A stretch of 61,354 bases of DNA, the filler included, from Platydemus manokwari (Eukaryota): assembly GCA_037951405.1 (NCBI GenBank). It is 5 parts of 5 records of this genome, joined end to end, with 100 filler letters (N's around TTAATTAATTAA, not from the genome) between each part and the next. Parts side by side here need not be neighbours in the genome. Positions count along the whole stretch, not along the records: positions 28,981 to 39,234 come from JBBMOY011153437.1; 4 more parts are not named here. One strand, 5' to 3'. Shown piece by piece: positions 28,981 through 39,234 of this stretch (positions are counted from its first letter, which is position 1; each line of letters begins with the position of its first letter). The notes under the pieces were generated by a model. It searched no databases, was not told where the DNA came from, and saw nothing but the letters and a program-made list of their open reading frames with translations. The translations under genes were made by a program, and so were the position numbers.

Positions 28981-29289
28981 GAATATAATTAAATAAACTA
29001 TATAGAATTTTGCAATACACTTAACAAATTAAAAATTTTATTTGATGACCTTCTTTTTTGACTTTAGCCAGATTATTAAATTCTTTAATGTTAATTTAAT
29101 AAATGACTAATTCCAATTTAATTTAATTATATTTTCATTAGATTACATTTCATAATATATAGTCAACTTCGTTTTTAATTACTTATCTCTTTTTTTATCT
29201 CTTATTTATTTAATAATCATTGAATTTTAGAATAAATTTGACAATATAAGATTCCAAAATATAACTTGTCAGAATATTGATTATCGTAG

Positions 29290-29700
29290 AACATTGAAGT
29301 TTATTCAGTGATCAGTTGAAATATCACAGGAATCTCAATTAGTAGTCACATCATGTATCTACAGATTGCTTCGCCTCCACAATGGTAAAGGTCCACATTC
29401 GATAAGTTTAAGTCCTTACCTAGTGTTGATTATCCATTTTACTTTCCTTAACTTATCTGACAACCCAGAGTACCCATCGTTTTCACATTGCCAGAGTCTA
29501 TTTTGTCATCACTCAATTAGTCGAATAAAATGAGGTGAATCACTTACATACCTTAGAAACCTTTCCTAGATGGAATTCTGATTGTTTAAAACTCGTTTTA
29601 ATGTTCAAAATAATACATTCCAATATAATTTTATTAATAAATTATTGGTATACGCATTGTAAAGTCTGGAGTATGTTATTCAAGGACCAATGCCAAGGTC
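29290..29700 (-). mobile_element. Highly decayed LTR-retrotransposon pol (RT/RNase H) remnant
   Basis: Only short broken motifs on the minus strand (LSDKLRKVKW, FTIVEA, ISTDH), in the expected order, with many stops and frameshifts. Confidence 0.3.
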
Positions 29701-32479
29701 TAACAAAGAACTGTAAATATCGACATTAACAATTCCATTTTGGACATATTTGTTGTGTTAATCTTTAAACGCATTATCCGCAGTGAATTGAAATTTCATC
29801 TACTACTCGATTACAAATTATTCTTCATCCAATTGCTCATTTATTGATATTAATTTTAGATCAACGATTTTAATGTATTGCCAATGGGATTTTCGATTAC
29901 GTCAAAATTTGCAGCTACTTTACAAGAGATTTTTAGCTTCAGTAGATTTTTACCTTATTTGATTTTCATATGTGCAATCCAGTAAATTCTTTTCTCATTT
30001 TGTCTGCTACAAGTTCCCTTGTACCTATATTTGTATCGCACCAAAATTTTTATTCGAGTCGCCTTAGATTGATTTTTAATGTACTATTTTACCCTCCCCA
30101 CAAATTGGTCTAATCGCTGGCAAGTAATTCATTTATCTCCCAAGTTAATTTGTTATGTCTTCTGAAACACCGTCAAAAGAGCTGTGGCATTTTTTAAAAT
30201 TTTTAAGTATCTATTCATTGATGTACTCTTTTCATACATGGATGTCCTTCACAGCTCGTATTTTGAAATACTTAAAGTACAATTTAGCTATATAACATCA
30301 CATGAAATTACTATGGACCCAAGTTCCTTGGCAGTCTGTTTTAAGGTCTCTCTGATTTTACTTCAGCACGTTTAACTCCAGTCTTTTAGATTTTTATTGG
30401 ATTTAATAAAATTTTTTATCTAAATTAAATTGATTAATAAATTGTTGCAGATAGACATCACATCTAAAAGAATAATAATTATCATACATTTTTTTCATAA
30501 TTTCCTTAATTATTTAAATTAAAATTAACCGAAATCCAAAAATTTATTCAAAATTAGACGATCAATAAAAAAGAAACTAAAAAATAGAAATAAAAATAAA
30601 GAGATAAATATAGGATAAATAATTACTAAAATTAATTTTGAAAAATAATATAAAAGAAAAAAAGGCACAAAAATTATGTAAATATAAAATTTAATTACAG
30701 AAAAAACGTGCACAAACTATACATAGAATTAATTAAATTGAGTTATTTTGCCACGTGATAAATTGTAGAACATAAATAGTAAGGAAGAATATTAACAAGA
30801 TATTTTTTCTACAACTAGACGAATCGATATTATATTCTAAACGGAATTTTTATCATAAAACAACCGTTCACAATGACAACGAATTTCTTAATGAAATAAT
30901 TTTGACCGACTAATTATTCTTTCACTTGAATAAGGTCTATTTTTAGAATTGATAATTTATTTGACTTACCCCTCACTAGTATCTAAAATTTTCTTTTAAA
31001 TCAAGAGTTCTTGTTGGCTCAACTATCAATAAAGTTTGAAAAAGCAAACAAGGCTCTTACGGTGAAAACACACGAGACGTCCTTAAATTTCATCGAGAAA
31101 ACAATAGAATTCTTAATAATTAATCAGATTCAATTCCTTGATTATTCATTGCTTATTAATCATTTTGCGATTATTTAAACCCAATTGTATTTAATACGAA
31201 TTTTATTGTAGATTTTGATATATTTTCTATTTTAATTTATATTTTAATATTTCTAAAATTTCTAAACAGTAACTGTATCCGTTGTTTTGAGATTTTAAAT
31301 TAGCATTTTATAGTAAATCCACCACAGATTTGAAATCGTTACAACTCATTAATTCGCACAAACTGTTCAAAAATAAAAATAAAATAACCCATCGTGAACA
31401 TAATAATAAATTTGATTTTCGTTTTAATTAAAGTTGATCAAATGAATATTTTTAATTAAAAATAAATTGAGGAACTTTGTAATTTGTTCTCTGTAAGCTC
31501 AATTTTTCATTTTCCAATTAAGTGGGCGAATATTCGTGAATGGAGAATATTTTGAATGGAGAATTAATCGATGTAAAATGATTGAAACAATGCTCCACAG
31601 CTCGGATATGTGAGAAATTAATAATAATGTTTTGACAATATGGAACTAAACTACGAATTTGAGAAAATTAACGCTATATTTTGATGACAAAATGAAATAT
31701 GGAATTTTTGAAAGTCTTTTATATTATTGGGATTTATTGAGAGAGTGATTTTAAAACTAGAATTTTAAAATGAATTAAATCAATTAAGCCTTGGGAAAGA
31801 TGTAATAATATTATTAATGATAATAATTATATTTATATCAGATAAATTTCGATTTCAATAACCAATGGCATTAAAAATTCCATCTCTACTATCAATACAC
31901 ATCAAACAACTCTAATAAATCATAAACTATGAAATCAACATGAAATCCACGACCGTTTGACTAAATCGATATTCTTTACTATTAAAATGTTATCATTTGT
32001 ATTCCATTTTATTTACAGAAATAGTCTAAAGGTCAATTCATTACATTTTTACAAAAAACTATCAAATTAAACATTTGAAAGAGATGAATATTTGATTGGT
32101 CTGTTGTAACTGATGTTTGATATTGAGAACCGTAATGCAATTGTTACTTGGTCGTTACCGTGTTGAAAGCGTTACGAGGCAACCGAAATGTCACATTTGT
32201 AAAAAAATTGTGAAAATGCGAAGAGTTCAATCAGCATACTTCAAAGTGTTCATTTCACGAGATCTTTTAAGCAAAAGTGAAGATATTCCGTCAAAAAGGT
32301 AAATTTGAATGGAATCAATGGGGAAGAATTAGTATCTAAAACCAAATAAATATAATTATATACATTAGCTAAATTAAATGGATCGTTCTTTCATGTCTTT
32401 AAAACGCTTTTGAAGCGAAAATCTTAGCGAGTAACAGCCATAATAACAGTTTTCATTTCTTGGCCAATGATGAATAATA

Positions 32480-32800
32480 ATATAAGCTTGTTCAGACAAG
32501 TTGTCAATGCACTTTCTATATGATTTTCCATTCTAGTCTTATAGTGCAGCTCAGTAGGTGGGTAGAATGCAATCTCATTCGTTGTGCATGCAATGAAAAT
32601 TTTTTAAGTGTCATTTGTCTTTTAAAATCTTATTTCTAGACCGTTTCACTTACAGTAATGTTTCGATAGGAATGAGTATGTTTGGGCTTATCAATTACGT
32701 TTGGTAACATAAGAGCTCGTTAACTTGCTCAGTTCGATTGGCTGATTTTAGAGATTAAAGTTAATTCCTCGAATTCAAATTGTTAATGCATTGTTAACGT
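32480..32800 (-). mobile_element. Decayed non-LTR retrotransposon AP-endonuclease remnant
   Basis: Broken motifs TI*IRG (compare WNIRG), KPNILIPIET (compare PDI.LQET) and IAFYPP occur in the expected order. Confidence 0.35.
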
Positions 32801-34229
32801 TAAGTTGATCTGTTTATGAAGCGATATTTTCCTATAATTTTTCTATAAAGATATTCAGTTGGAGTATGTGATCGGGTATCTAAACTCGCTTGTGTTGAAC
32901 TTGTTCTATAGGTACCACCTTTCGTGGTTGTTTGAGATTTTCCTGGGAAGTGTTTTATTAGTGCTCTGGTGTTTCCTGTACTCCTAAGAGTATTGATTAA
33001 GCATTTCTCAAGTTTTGAACCTGTCAAGATTGTTAAGACTTGATTACTAGAAACAATTTTTTAGTTCGCATTGAGAAATAGGTCTAAATGGTTAAATATT
33101 ATGAAATCGATTGATGAGAATTTTATTATTATCATTGTCCATCGATTGTCTAAAATCTGGTCTATTGAGTAACAATGAATATTTCTAGGGATTATTATGA
33201 TAATTTTTAATGTTTTTTATTTAATTTTATATAATTCAGCATACAATTATTTAGTATCAATCGATAATTTATTTTATTATATTTAATTTATTCTCTTTTT
33301 GAGTTACAGTTTTGGGATCAACTAAACTATTATGTTACAAAACTAATGATTTATATCAATGTGAGAAGTCTTTATAATTGTCAATTCACGAAAATTAGAA
33401 TTATAAAAATTAGAATTATTTAATATTAGGTTGAGAATTCATAGTGAAATAATTATTGACCAATAGGATACAACTCACATTATTAGATACAAAATACTAA
33501 TATATCATGCAATCTAACTACTAAAGATCTAATATTCCTCAGTGTATCAATATTCCTACTGAACATTTCTTTATAATTCTTATAACTTATTTATGAAAAA
33601 GTCTTGGATTAAAATAATCTTAATAATAATTATCATCATTATAAAATATAAATTTAATAATTAAAACTGGATTGTGTGATGGCTTCGTTAAGAATTTATG
33701 ATCACATTTTATCATTTTCATATTCTGATTCACATCAATTTAAATTTAATAGCGGATTTTATGCAAATTCTTGATTTATAGTTAGCAGATAATTTTAAGA
33801 TTGGATGAAATAATGGTATTTTTATTATTTCCTTTTTGGCTTTATATGTTTAATTAAAGGCCATTTCAGTTTATAATTATCGATGCACTTTTCATGACTA
33901 TCAATTTCCTGTCTCTATAATGAATACAATCTCTCATGATTTATCGAATACCAACATCGAGATTTGAATATTAATCAAGAAAAATACTAAAAACTCATTA
34001 TTGCGCAATAAGGTTTCAACATTGATTTCGATTCATAATGGGAACTAATATGACGAATGAAAATAATTATTATTGAAAACATAATGAGGTTTTGCTGACT
34101 GAATCAAGGAGTCAATCGGTATATCATATCCATCATTATAAAAAAGTGATCGAATACGTCATTTAATAAGTCGCTGGTGGGTGGATTTGAAACCGAAACT
34201 ATTTCACATACAATTTTTTGGATTTGGGT

Positions 34230-34709
34230 TGCAGATATATTGATACTCCGACCAGAACTGTGATATATCCATTATTACATTTTTTAATTCAAAGTATTTG
34301 TATTTATCAAGCCTACAAACGGCAGCAAGCCCGTATATCCGCCAATGACGAGTGAGATGGAAGGAAAATCTCAAATAGATCGATCCACGAACGAATTCAG
34401 CGAATTGAAAACGAAGATACCTGACATCAAGTAGACACACCCGATAGGTCTATAATGAGGTTGAATTTCTTGGATTGTTGCCAGTATATTTTGATCGTTA
34501 ACTTGAATGTTTAGCCTATGTGTGATTTTAGTAATCAGTCTTTTTGATTACTTTTCATTCTATTTTTGACTTTCGGGTACTGATCCCATCTTAAATCATT
34601 TCCTTTGTGAATTGCGTAAAGATTTGTTATTGTTATCATTGAGACTTTGAGTGTAATATTTTAGTTAATACAGATTTCTAGATTCATATTGTTGATTGAT
34701 AAAGCAACA
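34230..34709 (+). mobile_element. Probable solo LTR (copy 2; 5' boundary uncertain)
   Basis: Collinear with 24011-24568 and 40067-40445; ends in GCAACA. Confidence 0.55.
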
Positions 34710-36208
34710 ATGTATTATAACAAAGTAAAATTGATTGTCGAATAAAAGGGAGCCTAAAATTGAACATCCATTTTTTATCTGATTATCAGATAAATATCAA
34801 TCAATAATAAAAATGGACAGGTCGATTTCGAGAAAAATTGTCAATTACCATAACCATAGAAAAAAAAATTCATTAAACAATTTGAAAAAAAATGGTTTTT
34901 CTCGAACTTCTACAATTGGGATGAGATATTACTTACAAAATATAAAGTTGATAATTATTCTTATGAGATAATTAATTTCCCTGTATCCGTTTCATTAAAA
35001 GAAAAAAAGAAATTATATACATCGTCTGGATTATTAGCTTTTCATTTCATTAAAACTCGAGACTCATTTTAAAAGCGATCATTGGTGATCACAATCACTT
35101 AGAAGTCTGATTATGTTCTTGTAGAGTCCTTTCAAGTAATTGATTGATTCTTCTTATTCATCACTATATCGATAATATAATTATAATTTCATTGATTTTA
35201 TTTAGATTTATATCATATATCGAATTGTGATATCTATAAAATTTGACGTTGATATTGTTTTTAACTTTTGAGAAATGTTTATGTCGACCAATAATAATTT
35301 GATATTTGAAAGCAACTTGTGAATTTTATTTAAAATATTTTATTTTTTATTAAATCTAAGTGGATTCCATTACCATTTCACCTAACCCAGGTTAAAATTT
35401 ATCCCAGTGACCTTCAAGAGCTAAATATACATGATAAATTCGATATGAATTAATGATTATGCCCAAATTTACAATATTAATATTTAATCCGAGTCTATTG
35501 ATTTATTTTACAATCAGATGATGGGATTTGTTCGCTAAAGGATTCGATTAAAAAAATGTTGACAACTGGTCAAAGAAACCTTAATGAAAAGATTATAACA
35601 CAAATCGAATAATGAAATCTTTAAAGGATCATCATTTTCGTGTAAAACTTATTATCATAGAAATAAACGTCTTGTTTTAACCAATCAGTATTCTGATTTT
35701 AAAGGTTTTTTGGTTTTGATTTAAGTTTAAAGCTAGAAATAATTTATGATCATTGTTGATAAATGCGAAATTAGAAATTGTCGTCCATGGAATAATTGAT
35801 TACATTAGAGAGAGAGATAAATAAAACAGATAACATTCTAAATTTATTCCATAATTGATATAAATATTATCTGGTGATTATTTGATAAGTCGATGCTTTA
35901 ATCACAAGTTAAAAATAAATAAATAAATAAATAATCAATTATTAATTTATAATACAGTGAATATGATATCGGCAATTTATCGATTGAAACTATTATGAGT
36001 CTTAAATTTTAACTTAAGCCTTCAGGTGGAAAAAGAGTTTTAGGGAAAAGTGGCTAGTGAGTTCGGGTTTTTTTTCTTATTTAATGTTCATTCTCATTGG
36101 ACGGGATATGTCGATAAGAAACACGAACGCAATCACTGCCGTTACTTGAAGAACTGAAAAGTATTTTTAAAATTTTCTTATCTGAATTACAATTTTCAAC
36201 TTATATAT

Positions 36209-36641
36209 ATAGGATTGGAACAAAAGTCTTGTCCGATAGAAAACAATATTTATTTAACAAAAAGAGACAGCATGTAAATTACGACATGTTTAACTCAAAA
36301 TAAGCTTCCTGAGATCGGATTCACCATACTCCCCAGACTTTGTCCTTTCAGACTATTATCTGTTTTCTCCTATGAAAAATTCGTTTCGTGGGAAAACGTA
36401 CCACTTCACCAAAGAAGTTAATGATGATTCAGAAAAGTGGTTCGCTTCAAAACCTGCGGAATTCTTTGAAAACTGCATAAAACAACTTCCAGAATGCTGG
36501 CAAAAGTGTATAGATGTTAAAGGTGATTTCAGATTTACAGAAAAATGATGTTTTGTTTATATTTCTCCATTTACGTATTTTCTTTATTGATTAAATAAAT
36601 ATTATTTGCTATCTGACAAAAATTTCGTTCCAATGCCATTA
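36209..36641 (+). mobile_element. mariner transposon, internally deleted
   Basis: Imperfect ~45-bp TIRs (GATTGGAACAAAAGTCTTGTCCGATAG...ATTTATTT versus AAATAAAT...CTATCTGACAAAAATTTCGTTCCAATG) in a TA context. The interior encodes the mariner transposase C-terminus SPYSPDFVLSDYYLF...WFASKPAEFFENCIKQLPECWQKCIDVKGDF. Confidence 0.88.
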
Positions 36642-37994
36642 TTTAATTGAGAATTCATATGGAAACAAATTAATTTAAAAATTTTGTTTACCTAGAAATT
36701 AAATAATTATAATAATTATAAGCTTGAATCCGACAGAGTCGGTCAATTCAGAAGAGAGTCGTGAAGTCAATTTCTAGGACGAACCAGGGGTTTAATTTTT
36801 CTCTTCTCCAATGTTCTCAGAGATAGCCATATCAACCAGTCTCTTAAAAACTGGCAGACATTCAAATTTTGCAATTAATGGAATAAATTGGCGACCACAA
36901 ACCATTGGCTAAAAAAAACATTTTCTCTCCCCATGAAATCTTTGGTGATCAGATCCTAATCAATTATTAAAATAGATGGTGATTATGCTCCTAAATAATT
37001 ATAAAACTTATGTGGAGTGAATTTGAATATTCTTTACTTCATTAATATTAAATTCATTAAATGCCAAGCATTAATACAACATCGATCCAATAATACATCA
37101 TTTGTTGGGCAATTTTAAAAATACTATTTTATTTAAAATTAAAATATCTATAAATAATTGATTAATAGATAAATAATTTTAATAATAGTTTTTATTATAT
37201 TTATTCCTACTAGATGTATTGATAATGAACTGAAAATAATTAAATCTTATTTTCTTAATGATTCAAAATTGTTCTATTTATAGATCATATTTATATTTAT
37301 GAACATTATATAATACGATGTATAAACAAATATCCTGTAATGTCGAAATTTGAATTTCCTTTCACTTGAATTAATTAGTGTGTTTTGTTTTATCGAAACA
37401 GTTTTCGTATTTGAAATTTTCCATGGTAATTTAAAATGAAAATCATGTTGAATAATAAAATAATGATAAAACCCATTAAAATGCTTCACATTCAATTCGA
37501 TTTATCAATGAAATCTTCAATGGCAATAATTGAAAATGAAGCCAATGAAATTTATTAAAATGAGCCATAGATAAGATATCAAAAAGCAAAACTTGTACAT
37601 AAATATATATATGATATAAAAAATTCGATCAATACGAAATAAAGTGGATAATTGTTGAAATGGCTTATTATGGATTTTATGAATATACACATAGAATATG
37701 CACAATCATCATCACAACAAATATTTGATGGATTTTATTATGAAAATACACTCGTCTCATACTGAAAAATGCACCGAATCAAGAGGAAAATTAAAAAAAT
37801 AAATGCAAATTCTAGTGACAGAACATCTTGAAATTGTTAATTGTCAAAATATGGAAAATGAAGTAATAATAATAATAATAATCTGATTAATGTCAAATAA
37901 ATAATCAATATGCTATTCATATCCACACAATGTTCATTGTCAAGGATTTTTTTCATTTGTGCAATTCGAATAGAATAAGAGGAATTCTCTGTCG

Positions 37995-39233
37995 TTATTT
38001 CTTTAAAAAGGCATCTTCAAGCAAATTCTCAACAGTTGCTCTTTCTCGAGGATCACCTTTCAAACATGAATAAATGAATGATTTCAGTTCAACAGCAGTC
38101 CCATGAGGTAACTCGTATTCAATACTACGAGATTCCGATATCGAAAATAGTGCATCAGCTTCACTTTTATCCGGACACGGAGGAGAACCTAGAAAATCGT
38201 TTTTTGTTTGATAAAAGAAATTGATCAAATGGAAATATTACCAGTTACAATCTCAACTAAAGTGGCACCGAATGACCATACATCGGCTTGTTTGCCGTAT
38301 GGTTCGTTATTGCACACCTCCGGTGCCATGTGTCTGTATTTTTTCACTTTCGATTTCTCAAACCCATCCATCTGATAATGTGGCCAGTAGCCTTGAGAAT
38401 ATTTGGCTAGAGTGAAACTGGACAGTTTTACATTTTGGCTTCCATCGACTAGAATATTCGATGCTAAAAAAAATCACGGATTGTTTTATGAATGCCATAT
38501 AATTAACGGTCTAACGTTTCAAATCTCGATGAATAATATCTCTGTCATGAAGATATTTCAGACCCTCAAGAATTTGTTTGGACCATTTCGAAATGATGGT
38601 TTCATTTATTGGCCAATTTTTCCCAAGAAATTCTTTCACCGATCCCTAAATAAACGATTCAATTCAATAAAATGCATCCAGTTTATTTACTCCAATCATC
38701 TTCTCGGTTTCAATGTAGAGATAATCAGCCGTTTTGCATATGCCAAATAATTGCACAAATCTTTCATGATTTTTCGTAATCTGAACCGTTGTCAACTCAT
38801 TCAAAAGAGCTTTATCATCCTTTAAATTGGCATTTCTCGTCAACTGATAACGTTTCAAAATGATTTCCTGTCCAGAAAATCGTTTTTGAGCTCTGAAAAT
38901 CTCCGAAAAGTCCCCATTGACAAGGACACCACTGATAATTTCCACATCATCCAAACTGAAGATAAAATCTATCATCAAACACAAAATCCTCCCATCCATT
39001 CATTCATTGTACCTCATCAAACGACAATATTTAATTTGATATTCATGTTCGATCCCAATCTCAAACAAAAATTTTCGATCGTCTAAAAATGTATTGTTTG
39101 AAAATAGAATCAAATCATTGTGATTGAAATGTTTTTTATCGGCGATGGCATACTTTACAGTGGCAATCGAGTCGACATTGCTATATTCAATAGCTATCGG
39201 TTCGCGATCAGCGAATATTGAATTGAGAGGGAG
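37995..39233 (-). CDS. Ubiquitin-like domain fused to a STE11/MAP3K-like protein kinase domain (probable pseudokinase); 5' end cut by the contig edge
   Basis: Exons 39233-39013, 38955-38691, 38645-38516, 38463-38242 and 38188-37995, joined by GT-AG introns of 45-57 nt, all frame-compatible with no stops. Kinase motifs: IILK, LLNEL, GGSVKEFL, QILEGLKYLH, IIHRDLKPSNIL, VKLSSFTLAK, MAPE, ADVWSFG, DPRERATVENLL. The first visible exon has a ubiquitin-like pattern. Confidence 0.88.
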
Positions 39234-39234
39234 T

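What the first reader, a model, noticed from the sequence alone, without database searches (positions are those of the whole stretch)
37995..39233. Ubiquitin-like domain fused directly to a MAP3K-like kinase domain
Seen: exon 39233-39013, which is absent from the ORF track, reads LPLNSIFADREPIAIEYSNVDSIATVKYAIADKKHFNHNDLILFSNNTFLDDRKFLFEIGIEHEYQIKYCRLM. It aligns almost without gaps to ubiquitin (ITLEV/IAIEY, DTIENVKAKIQDK/DSIATVKYAIADK, LEDGRTLSDYNI/LDDRKFLFEIGI), has no Gly-Gly, and splices in frame straight into kinase subdomain I. Known: MEKK2/3 carry an N-terminal PB1 domain separated from the kinase by a long linker, and IKK/TBK1 have their Ubl C-terminal to the kinase. Inference: an integral ubiquitin-type domain abutting a STE11-like domain is an architecture I do not recognise. 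It may be a lineage-specific adaptor linking ubiquitin-binding partners to MAPK signalling.
Basis: partly seen in the sequence, partly recalled or inferred. Interest (0 to 1): 0.8.

Follow-up and report, generated by a model that had tools for sequence, protein, structure and literature searches.

The report
Ubiquitin-like domain fused to MAP3K-like pseudokinase
A five-exon gene in an unidentified AT-rich eukaryote joins a ubiquitin-fold domain, with almost no linker, to an ASK1/MEKK-like kinase domain that has lost a key catalytic residue; it belongs to a rare, unannotated family, and is an unusual variant of domain pairings seen elsewhere rather than a new kind of system.

Summary
On the minus strand, five exons (39233-39013, 38955-38691, 38645-38516, 38463-38242, 38188-37995) join in frame through four GT..AG introns of 45-57 nt. 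The first exon is ubiquitin-like: Pfam ubiquitin E 3e-4 (below threshold here, above it in the closest homologue), an almost gapless alignment to ubiquitin repeats, and a model matching ubiquitin at TM 0.83-0.88. It has no Gly-Gly and meets kinase subdomain I after about 5-7 residues.

Kinase exons C, D and E match MAP3K5/ASK1 and MAP3K2 best. The N-lobe is very divergent, two of three glycine-loop glycines are lost, and DFG reads SSF, so it is probably a pseudokinase or atypical kinase.

Four other loci in public assemblies share the Ubl exon. Three also show the following kinase exon, with the intron at the same position and phase. Those homologues show the Ubl exon is not the first exon, and probably follows further Ubl-like exons. 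The window copy is cut by the piece edge.

The novelty claim is only partly right. Sponges hold about 45 proteins with ubiquitin repeats N-terminal to a kinase, and plant UbDK kinases carry N-terminal Ubl domains. Direct abutment on a MAP3K-like pseudokinase is a new variant. There is no RNA evidence and the organism is unknown.

The parts
39013..39233 (-). Ubl exon, cut at its 5' end by the piece edge. It has a ubiquitin-type beta-grasp fold, no Gly-Gly, and ends in phase 2 (..ATG AG|GT).
   Evidence: Homologous exons: P0001, P0007, P0014, P0022.
38956..39012 (-). Intron 1, 57 nt, GTACAA..TCTTCAG. It holds an in-frame ATG at 38999-38997, so a kinase-only ORF is formally possible.
   Evidence: The position and phase are conserved in L001, L002 and L004.
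38691..38955 (-). Kinase exon B, the N-lobe. The glycine loop is degenerate (V-N-G-D-F-S). The beta3 Lys (IILKRY) and alphaC Glu (LLNELTT) are kept.
   Evidence: Pfam Pkinase positions 9-80. Alignment A3. The profile finds no PDB chain at E<=1e-3.
38646..38690 (-). Intron 2, 45 nt, GT..AG.
38516..38645 (-). Kinase exon C, from alphaD to the catalytic loop (QILEGLKYLHD..HRDLK).
   Evidence: Pfam Pkinase 38.4 bits. Best PDB match is MAP3K5/ASK1 at 7e-8, with MAP3K2 at 7e-6.
38464..38515 (-). Intron 3, 52 nt, GT..AG.
38242..38463 (-). Kinase exon D: PSN of the catalytic loop, SSF in place of DFG, MAPEV, and ADVWSFG.
   Evidence: The A4 profile finds MAP3K2 at 9e-11 and MAP3K5 at 1e-9.
38189..38241 (-). 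Intron 4, 53 nt, GT..AG.
37995..38188 (-). Kinase exon E, the end of the C-lobe (DPRERAT), with the TAA stop at 37997-37995.
   Evidence: PDB hits are MAP3K5 only, at E about 1e-4.

Best explanation
Shown:
- The window holds the 3' 343 codons of a spliced eukaryotic gene.
- A non-conjugatable ubiquitin-fold domain, encoded by its own exon, is joined by about 5-7 residues (..CRLM-S-LDDV..) to an ASK1/MEKK-like (STE11-type MAP3K-like) kinase domain.
- The gene belongs to a small unannotated family: this copy plus four loci in other assemblies. In the three loci that reach the kinase, the Ubl-to-kinase intron has the same position and phase, and no indel occurs at the junction.

Inferred from homologues:
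- The Ubl exon is preceded by at least one further exon of Ubl size with the same intron phases (two in L001). The full protein is therefore probably a short tandem array of Ubl modules ending directly on the kinase N-lobe.

Inferred mechanism:
- The DFG Asp is Ser in both copies where that region is seen.
- Only one of three glycine-loop glycines survives in all four N-lobes.
- One copy has HRN for HRD.
- The N-lobe is unusually divergent.
- Taken together, the kinase-like domain most likely acts as a pseudokinase or scaffold, perhaps still binding nucleotide, and not as a conventional MAP3K.
- The rigidly tethered Ubl, whose equivalents of the ubiquitin Ile44 patch (Phe44, Cys70) never vary in the family, serves either as an intramolecular brace on the N-lobe or as a docking surface for ubiquitin-binding partners.
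For: - Gene model.
- Ubl: Pfam, profile with shuffle control, alignment, model and fold matches, language-model neighbours.
- Recurrence: HMMER over 1.84 billion representatives finds four homologous exon fragments. Three of their contigs carry kinase exons directly downstream, and spliced models of L001, L002 and L004 have identical junction phase.
- Constraint: window versus L001 gives pN 0.28 and pS 0.74 for the Ubl exon, and pN 0.19 and pS 0.75 for kinase exon B.
- Kinase type.
- Catalytic motifs. SSF is shared by the window and L002, and L002 has HRN.
- N-lobe divergence.
- Upstream Ubl-like exons: Pfam E 0.02, hhalign in register at E 0.008 and 0.03, language-model neighbours 0.91-0.94, beta-grasp order of secondary structure in a weak model, family HMM beating 2000 of 2000 and 1990 of 2000 shuffles for the two L001 exons.
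Against: - There is no RNA evidence at all. The only run holding the sequence is a DNA-like contig set.
- The 5' end is missing from the window.
- The structure model used an alignment rich in ubiquitin rows, which biases it toward that fold.
- The window copy keeps Lys72, Glu91, the HRD Asp, Asn171 and APE, so activity without a DFG Asp remains possible. From general knowledge, CASK is a kinase that works without the DFG Asp; this was not checked here.
- Evidence that the upstream exons are Ubl is weak. L004 and L002 are not significant, and the model has pLDDT 50.
- The spliced full-length protein could not be given to any search or folding tool. Kinase classification is therefore per exon, and no Ubl-kinase interface was modelled.
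Confidence: 0.6

Rival explanations
1. It is an active but atypical MAP3K-like kinase. The adjacent Ubl regulates it in cis, as the ubiquitin-like domain of IKK-beta and TBK1 does from the other side of the kinase domain.
For: The window copy keeps the beta3 Lys, alphaC Glu, HRDLKPSN, APE, and the subdomain IX Asp and XI Arg. The C-lobe is well conserved and ASK1/MEKK2-like. Both domains are under purifying selection.
Against: The DFG Asp is Ser in both copies where it is seen. The glycine loop is degenerate in all four. L002 has HRN instead of HRD. The N-lobe profile finds no solved kinase.
Confidence: 0.25
2. These are two transcription units or isoforms. The Ubl exon belongs to an upstream poly-Ubl gene, and the kinase is translated on its own from the ATG at 38999, which lies in frame with exon B inside 'intron 1'.
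For: An in-frame ATG follows directly after the TGA that closes the unspliced Ubl frame. L002 also has an in-frame ATG 5 codons before exon B. No RNA data exist to exclude this.
Against: L001 and L004 have no usable in-frame ATG there. GT..AG is kept at the same position and phase in all four loci, and the junction has no indel. An intergenic distance of zero is implausible for a eukaryote whose other introns must be spliced.
Confidence: 0.07
3. It is a decaying or non-functional copy, or an artefact of gene prediction.
For: It lies at a contig edge in AT-rich, gene-poor sequence next to a decayed mariner element. Expression is not shown.
Against: 343 codons run without a stop or frameshift. 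All four introns have canonical ends. pN is far below pS against L001. The independent run's contig shows 3 other letters over 1342 nt and no insertions or deletions.
Confidence: 0.05
4. The N-terminal module is a PB1 domain, which would make this an ordinary MEKK2/3-type MAP3K.
For: PB1 is also a beta-grasp fold, and MAP3K2 is among the best kinase matches.
Against: Pfam reports only the ubiquitin family at E<=10 and no PB1. The top 50 structural matches are all ubiquitin-family structures: ubiquitin, FAT10, ISG15, SUMO, Rad23 Ubl. The long linker of MEKK2/3 is absent.
Confidence: 0.03

Closest known systems
MAP3K5/ASK1 and MAP3K2/MEKK2 (STE11-type MAP3K kinase domains)
   Same: They are the best solved matches for three of the four kinase exons. 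In exon C, MAP3K5 is the top single-domain match at 7e-8.
   Different: ASK1 is described as having thioredoxin-binding, TPR and PH regions before the kinase, and MEKK2/3 as having a PB1 domain and a long linker (general knowledge). Neither has a ubiquitin-family domain abutting the kinase. Here DFG reads SSF and the N-lobe is too divergent to match any solved kinase.
Sponge 'polyubiquitin-like' kinases (e.g. P0068, NCBI polyubiquitin-like isoform X2 of Dysidea avara; P0029)
   Same: Tandem ubiquitin-family domains lie N-terminal to a protein kinase domain in one polypeptide. About 45 proteins with this layout were found.
   Different: Their repeats are near-canonical ubiquitin. In the four members examined (P0029, P0036, P0063, P0068), 150-350 residues separate the repeats from the kinase, and in P0068 this stretch is Gln/Glu-rich. 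The kinase is of another type. P0068 has HRD and DLG, while P0029 has HCN and DIV. Similarity to the window kinase is only generic. No paper describing this family was found.
IKK-alpha/beta and TBK1/IKK-epsilon (kinase domain followed by a ubiquitin-like domain)
   Same: An integral Ubl sits immediately next to a kinase domain and contacts it (general knowledge; reviews listed).
   Different: The order is reversed, with the Ubl C-terminal to the kinase. The kinase family differs. Those enzymes are catalytically competent.
Plant UbDK / type II PI4K-gamma kinases
   Same: N-terminal Ubl domain(s) are fused to a domain with protein kinase activity (PMC3741686, which cites Galvao et al. 2008).
   Different: The catalytic domain is of the PI3/PI4-kinase type, not a eukaryotic protein kinase of the STE group.
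STRAD-alpha and other STE-group pseudokinases
   Same: A STE-group kinase fold with lost catalytic motifs that acts as an allosteric partner (general knowledge, offered as an analogy for mechanism only).
   Different: They have no Ubl domain, and no specific sequence relationship was tested here.

Membership tests
Ubiquitin family domain (Pfam PF00240), integral type | Score at or above the Pfam gathering cut-off (25.4 bits) | tested here: inconclusive
   Window exon 20.9 bits, E 3.1e-4. Homologous exons: L001 26.5 (passes), L004 22.9, L003 12.6, L002 none.
Ubiquitin family domain (Pfam PF00240), integral type | Beta-grasp fold (beta-beta-alpha-beta-beta-3/10-beta) | tested here: met
   AF2 pLDDT 78.3. 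Foldseek PDB TM 0.83-0.88 to ubiquitin, FAT10 and ISG15. Atlas TM 0.80-0.86. Caveat: the input alignment was rich in ubiquitin rows.
Conjugatable ubiquitin-like modifier | C-terminal Gly-Gly exposed or releasable | tested here: not met
   The domain ends ..YCRLM-S and continues into the kinase. No member of the family has GG.
Eukaryotic protein kinase (Pfam PF00069) | Kinase fold covering subdomains I-XI | tested here: met
   The four exons cover profile positions 9-262 of 263. Exons C and D each exceed the cut-off alone.
Catalytically competent protein kinase | GxGxxG loop, beta3 Lys, alphaC Glu, HRD Asp, catalytic-loop Asn, DFG Asp | tested here: not met
   Lys, Glu, the HRD Asp and Asn are present in the window. 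The DFG Asp is Ser (SSF) in the window and in L002. The glycine loop keeps 1 of 3 Gly in all four copies. L002 has HRN.
STE11-type MAP3K (ASK/MEKK) | The kinase domain groups with MAP3K1-5/15 rather than other groups | tested here: inconclusive
   Per-exon PDB searches: exon C MAP3K5 7e-8, exon E MAP3K5 only, exon D profile MAP3K2 9e-11 and MAP3K5 1e-9. Exon B gives CDK9 at 5e-5, and its profile gives nothing. No full-length search or tree was possible.
MEKK2/3-type MAP3K | N-terminal PB1 domain | tested here: not met
   No PB1 hit at E<=10. No PB1 among the top 50 fold matches.
IKK/TBK1 family | Ubl C-terminal to the kinase, followed by a scaffold or dimerisation domain | tested here: not met
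   The Ubl is N-terminal. The ORF stops 3 residues after the end of the kinase domain.
Sponge polyubiquitin-like kinases | Specific similarity of the kinase domain, and a long linker between the repeats and the kinase | tested here: not met
   BLASTP of exons B and D against the P0029 kinase shows only the APE/DVWSFG region, at E 5e-5. The window has no linker.

The most novel reading that the evidence does not exclude
The family encodes a built-in mimic of a linear polyubiquitin chain. Several Ubl modules, each on its own phase 2/2 exon and therefore easy to duplicate or skip, would be hard-wired to an ASK-like pseudokinase scaffold. Ubiquitin-chain readers would then be recruited constitutively to a MAP3K-type platform without any E3 ligase. 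The sponge poly-ubiquitin-kinase family would be an independent invention of the same logic.
Probability: 0.12. Interest if true: 0.7.

Novelty: new variant of a known kind. Interest (0 to 1): 0.42.

Why it matters
If the protein is expressed as modelled, it puts a ubiquitin-fold domain in direct, fixed contact with the N-lobe of a MAP3K-type kinase fold. I found this arrangement in no solved structure, no paper in the held library, and no annotated protein reached by these searches. It could show how a Ubl can regulate or replace the function of a kinase N-lobe. Together with the sponge family, it would suggest that Ubl arrays have been coupled to kinase-like scaffolds more than once. Against this, the family is tiny in public data (five loci), the organism is unidentified, and neither expression nor activity is shown. 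For now it is a curiosity with a clear experimental path and does not answer an open question.

Tried and rejected
- RNA evidence: the only run found is a DNA-like contig set. Its contig ends 1 nt past 39233.
It was therefore never searched or folded whole, and every kinase and Ubl test was made per exon.
- The word-index search with the Ubl family alignment returned only the four fragments already known. With the exon D profile it returned only L002's own exon.
- JGI metagenome contig scans with two kinase-exon profiles found nothing. The Ubl alignment had no stretch conserved enough to scan with.
- The scan of prokaryotic genomes returned only generic bacterial Ser/Thr kinases, and the viral contig scan returned two giant-virus (GVMAG) contigs with only generic kinase similarity, at 31-64% identity over short segments. 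None is a family member.
- The PB1 reading was rejected.
- P0029 and the sponge proteins were tested as possible relatives and rejected as close kin.
- The model of the upstream exon of L001 was too weak to use (pLDDT 50, Foldseek E about 1).
- Atlas look-ups for the farthest upstream L001 exon failed four times because the machine was busy.
- Literature searches for a described Ubl-MAP3K or Ubl-pseudokinase found none.
- The organism could not be identified. There is no Rfam hit, and the homologous contigs are unnamed Logan or ENA records.

Full report
**Scope.** Only places 28981-39234 of the window are real sequence. The finding lies at the right-hand edge of that piece, on the minus strand.

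**Gene model.** Five exons join in frame:

| Exon | Coordinates | Following intron |
|---|---|---|
| A | 39233-39013 | 57 nt |
| B | 38955-38691 | 45 nt |
| C | 38645-38516 | 52 nt |
| D | 38463-38242 | 53 nt |
| E | 38188-37995 | none |

All four introns are GT..AG. The result is 343 codons ending at TAA 37997-37995. Exon A ends ..ATG AG|GT and exon B begins T|TTG GAT, so the protein reads ..CRLM-S-LDDVEI... The piece averages about 27% GC. Outside this gene it has no open frame longer than 86 codons and no Rfam match.

**Is exon A ubiquitin-like?** Taken alone the sequence evidence is weak. Pfam ubiquitin gives E 3.1e-4 and 20.9 bits, below the 25.4 cut-off. Single ubiquitin chains in the PDB give E about 0.2. 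The very low E-values for polyubiquitin chains are sums over nine weak repeats and should be ignored. Four further lines support the call:
- An exhaustive HMMER search of 1.84 billion representatives found 30 proteins. Four are short exon-sized fragments of true homologues (P0001 at 56% identity, then P0007, P0014 and P0022). The rest are multi-repeat ubiquitin-like proteins.
- The family aligns to those repeats with one 2-residue indel, and Lys27 and Leu50 of ubiquitin are kept.
- A profile built only from the ubiquitin-like repeats scores the four homologous exons at 34, 26, 17 and 12 bits. Those exons played no part in choosing the repeats. The maximum over 10,000 shuffles was 12.2. The L001 exon passes the Pfam cut-off at 26.5 bits.
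- An AlphaFold2 model (pLDDT 78, pTM 0.64) has the beta-grasp order of elements and matches ubiquitin, FAT10, ISG15 and SUMO at TM 0.83-0.88, with no PB1 domain in the top 50. Language-model neighbours are ubiquitin families at 0.91-0.94.

One caveat applies to the model: its input alignment was rich in ubiquitin rows. There is no Gly-Gly. The equivalents of ubiquitin Ile44 and Val70 are Phe and Cys, and both are invariant in the family.

**Is the fusion real?** No RNA data could be found. The single run that holds the sequence is a set of DNA-like contigs that include the introns, and its contig ends 1 nt beyond 39233. The case therefore rests on comparison:
- The contigs that encode P0001, P0007 and P0022 (L001, L002, L004; GC 42%, 45%, 30%) all carry a kinase exon directly after the Ubl exon.
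- Spliced models of these loci have introns of 45-61 nt with GT..AG ends. The Ubl-to-kinase intron sits at the same codon position and phase (after Met, phase 2) as in the window, and no indel occurs at the junction.
- Between the window and L001, synonymous sites are saturated while the proteins are kept. For the Ubl exon pN is 0.28 and pS is 0.74. For kinase exon B pN is 0.19 and pS is 0.75.

One rival deserves mention. An ATG at 38999 inside intron 1 is in frame with exon B, so a kinase-only product is formally possible. L002 has such an ATG too, but L001 and L004 do not.

**What lies upstream?** In L001, L002 and L004 the Ubl exon begins at a phase-2 acceptor 9 codons before the conserved SIF motif. 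The ATG that a gene caller used in L002 lies inside that intron. The window holds only 4 of those 9 codons, so its exon is cut by the piece edge and is not the first exon.
- L001 and L004 share a further upstream exon that ends ..DYDW. This exon shows Pfam ubiquitin E 0.02 for the L001 copy, an in-register hhalign match at E 0.008, ubiquitin-family language-model neighbours, and beta-grasp order in a low-confidence model.
- L001 has a third exon of Ubl size, again phase 2/2. It scores above all 2000 shuffles with the family profile and gives hhalign E 0.03.
- The L004 and L002 upstream exons are not significant by that test.

I take a tandem array of Ubl modules before the kinase as probable, not shown. 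I did not try to recover the window's own upstream sequence.

**The kinase.** The four kinase exons cover Pfam Pkinase positions 9-262 of 263.

| Exon | Best solved matches |
|---|---|
| C | MAP3K5/ASK1 7e-8; MAP3K2 7e-6 |
| E | MAP3K5 only, about 1e-4 |
| D (window + L002 profile) | MAP3K2 9e-11; MAP3K5 1e-9, level with RSK2 and close behind TYK2; then STE20-group kinases |
| B (N-lobe) | CDK9 5e-5 |
| B (four-sequence profile) | nothing at E<=1e-3 |

An EGFR entry also ranks first for exons C and D. In one search it is matched over two stretches. I discounted it as a tandem-domain construct, which I did not verify.

'MAP3K-like' is therefore reasonable for the C-lobe, while the N-lobe is unusually divergent. 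Status of the catalytic motifs:
- The beta3 Lys and alphaC Glu are kept in all four copies.
- The glycine loop keeps one of its three glycines in all four.
- HRDLKPSN is intact in the window but reads HRNVKPSN in L002.
- DFG reads SSF in both copies where that region is seen.

The family has therefore lacked the metal-binding Asp since before these copies diverged. This points to a pseudokinase or an atypical enzyme.

**Comparison with what is known.** One of the 30 HMMER hits, P0029, has 11 ubiquitin repeats, a linker of about 150 residues and a C-terminal kinase-like domain. Searching with that kinase region found about 45 proteins with ubiquitin plus kinase Pfam domains. Most are from long ENA contigs, and one is the NCBI protein 'polyubiquitin-like isoform X2' of the sponge Dysidea avara. 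Corals and sponges carry the same kinase type with other N-terminal domains.

Ubl domains N-terminal to a protein kinase therefore already exist in databases, although I found no paper on them. That family differs from the window gene in three ways:
- Its repeats are near-canonical ubiquitin.
- In the four members examined, a 150-350 residue stretch separates the repeats from the kinase.
- Its kinase is related to the window's only generically.

Plant UbDK/PI4K-gamma kinases also carry N-terminal Ubl domains, but on a PI3/4-kinase fold. From general knowledge, IKK and TBK1 have the Ubl on the C-terminal side, and MEKK2/3 use a PB1 domain with a long linker.

**Family size.** Word-index searches, two metagenome scans, and scans of prokaryotic genomes and viral contigs added no member. 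The family is known from five loci. None is annotated or named, and the organism stays unidentified.

**Verdict.** It overstates the novelty of the architecture, and it misses both the likely loss of catalysis and the likely additional Ubl modules. I rate this a new variant of a known kind, of moderate interest. Expression, the 5' end and biochemical activity are the open points.

Noticed in passing
window 36321-36530 (+): The C-terminal ~70 residues of a mariner/Mos1-type transposase (SETMAR 1.5e-10, Mos1 2e-10, matching chain residues 271-339 of 345). Only this tail was found. Pfam found nothing in it or in the ORF just upstream. It is probably a decayed mariner copy about 1.4 kb 3' of the kinase gene.
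   Followed up: partly
window 38997-38999 (-), inside intron 1: An ATG in frame with kinase exon B follows directly after the TGA that closes the unspliced Ubl frame (..AATGAATGAATGG..). A kinase-only isoform is formally possible. L002 has a similar ATG, while L001 and L004 do not.
   Followed up: partly
P0029 / L005:495-4118, and P0032-P0068: About 45 proteins, apparently from sponges, with 2-15 ubiquitin repeats, a linker of 150-350 residues and a kinase domain that Pfam matches as PK_Tyr_Ser-Thr/Pkinase. One is annotated by NCBI only as 'polyubiquitin-like' in Dysidea avara. No paper describing the family was found.
   Followed up: partly
L001:218-1077: Three successive exons of Ubl size (about 71-78 codons), each with phase-2 introns on both sides. 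This pattern fits tandem exon duplication of a Ubl module and would allow exon skipping without a frame shift.
   Followed up: partly
window 38691-38954 (-), with L001, L002 and L004 exon B: The kinase N-lobe has a conserved G-D-(F/Y/V)-S-(E/D)-I motif in place of the glycine-rich loop. Its four-sequence profile matches no solved kinase at E<=1e-3, although the C-lobe is clearly ASK1/MEKK2-like.
   Followed up: partly
L003:299-526: After the Ubl exon this 526-bp metagenome contig starts a kinase-like stretch (..TDEVIAK..) and then turns into unrelated, GC-richer sequence. It may be a chimeric assembly.
   Followed up: no
window 28981-37990: Nine kilobases at 22-32% GC with no open frame over 86 codons, no Rfam match, and a short ATT microsatellite near 37870. 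This flank looks gene-poor or repeat-rich.
   Followed up: partly
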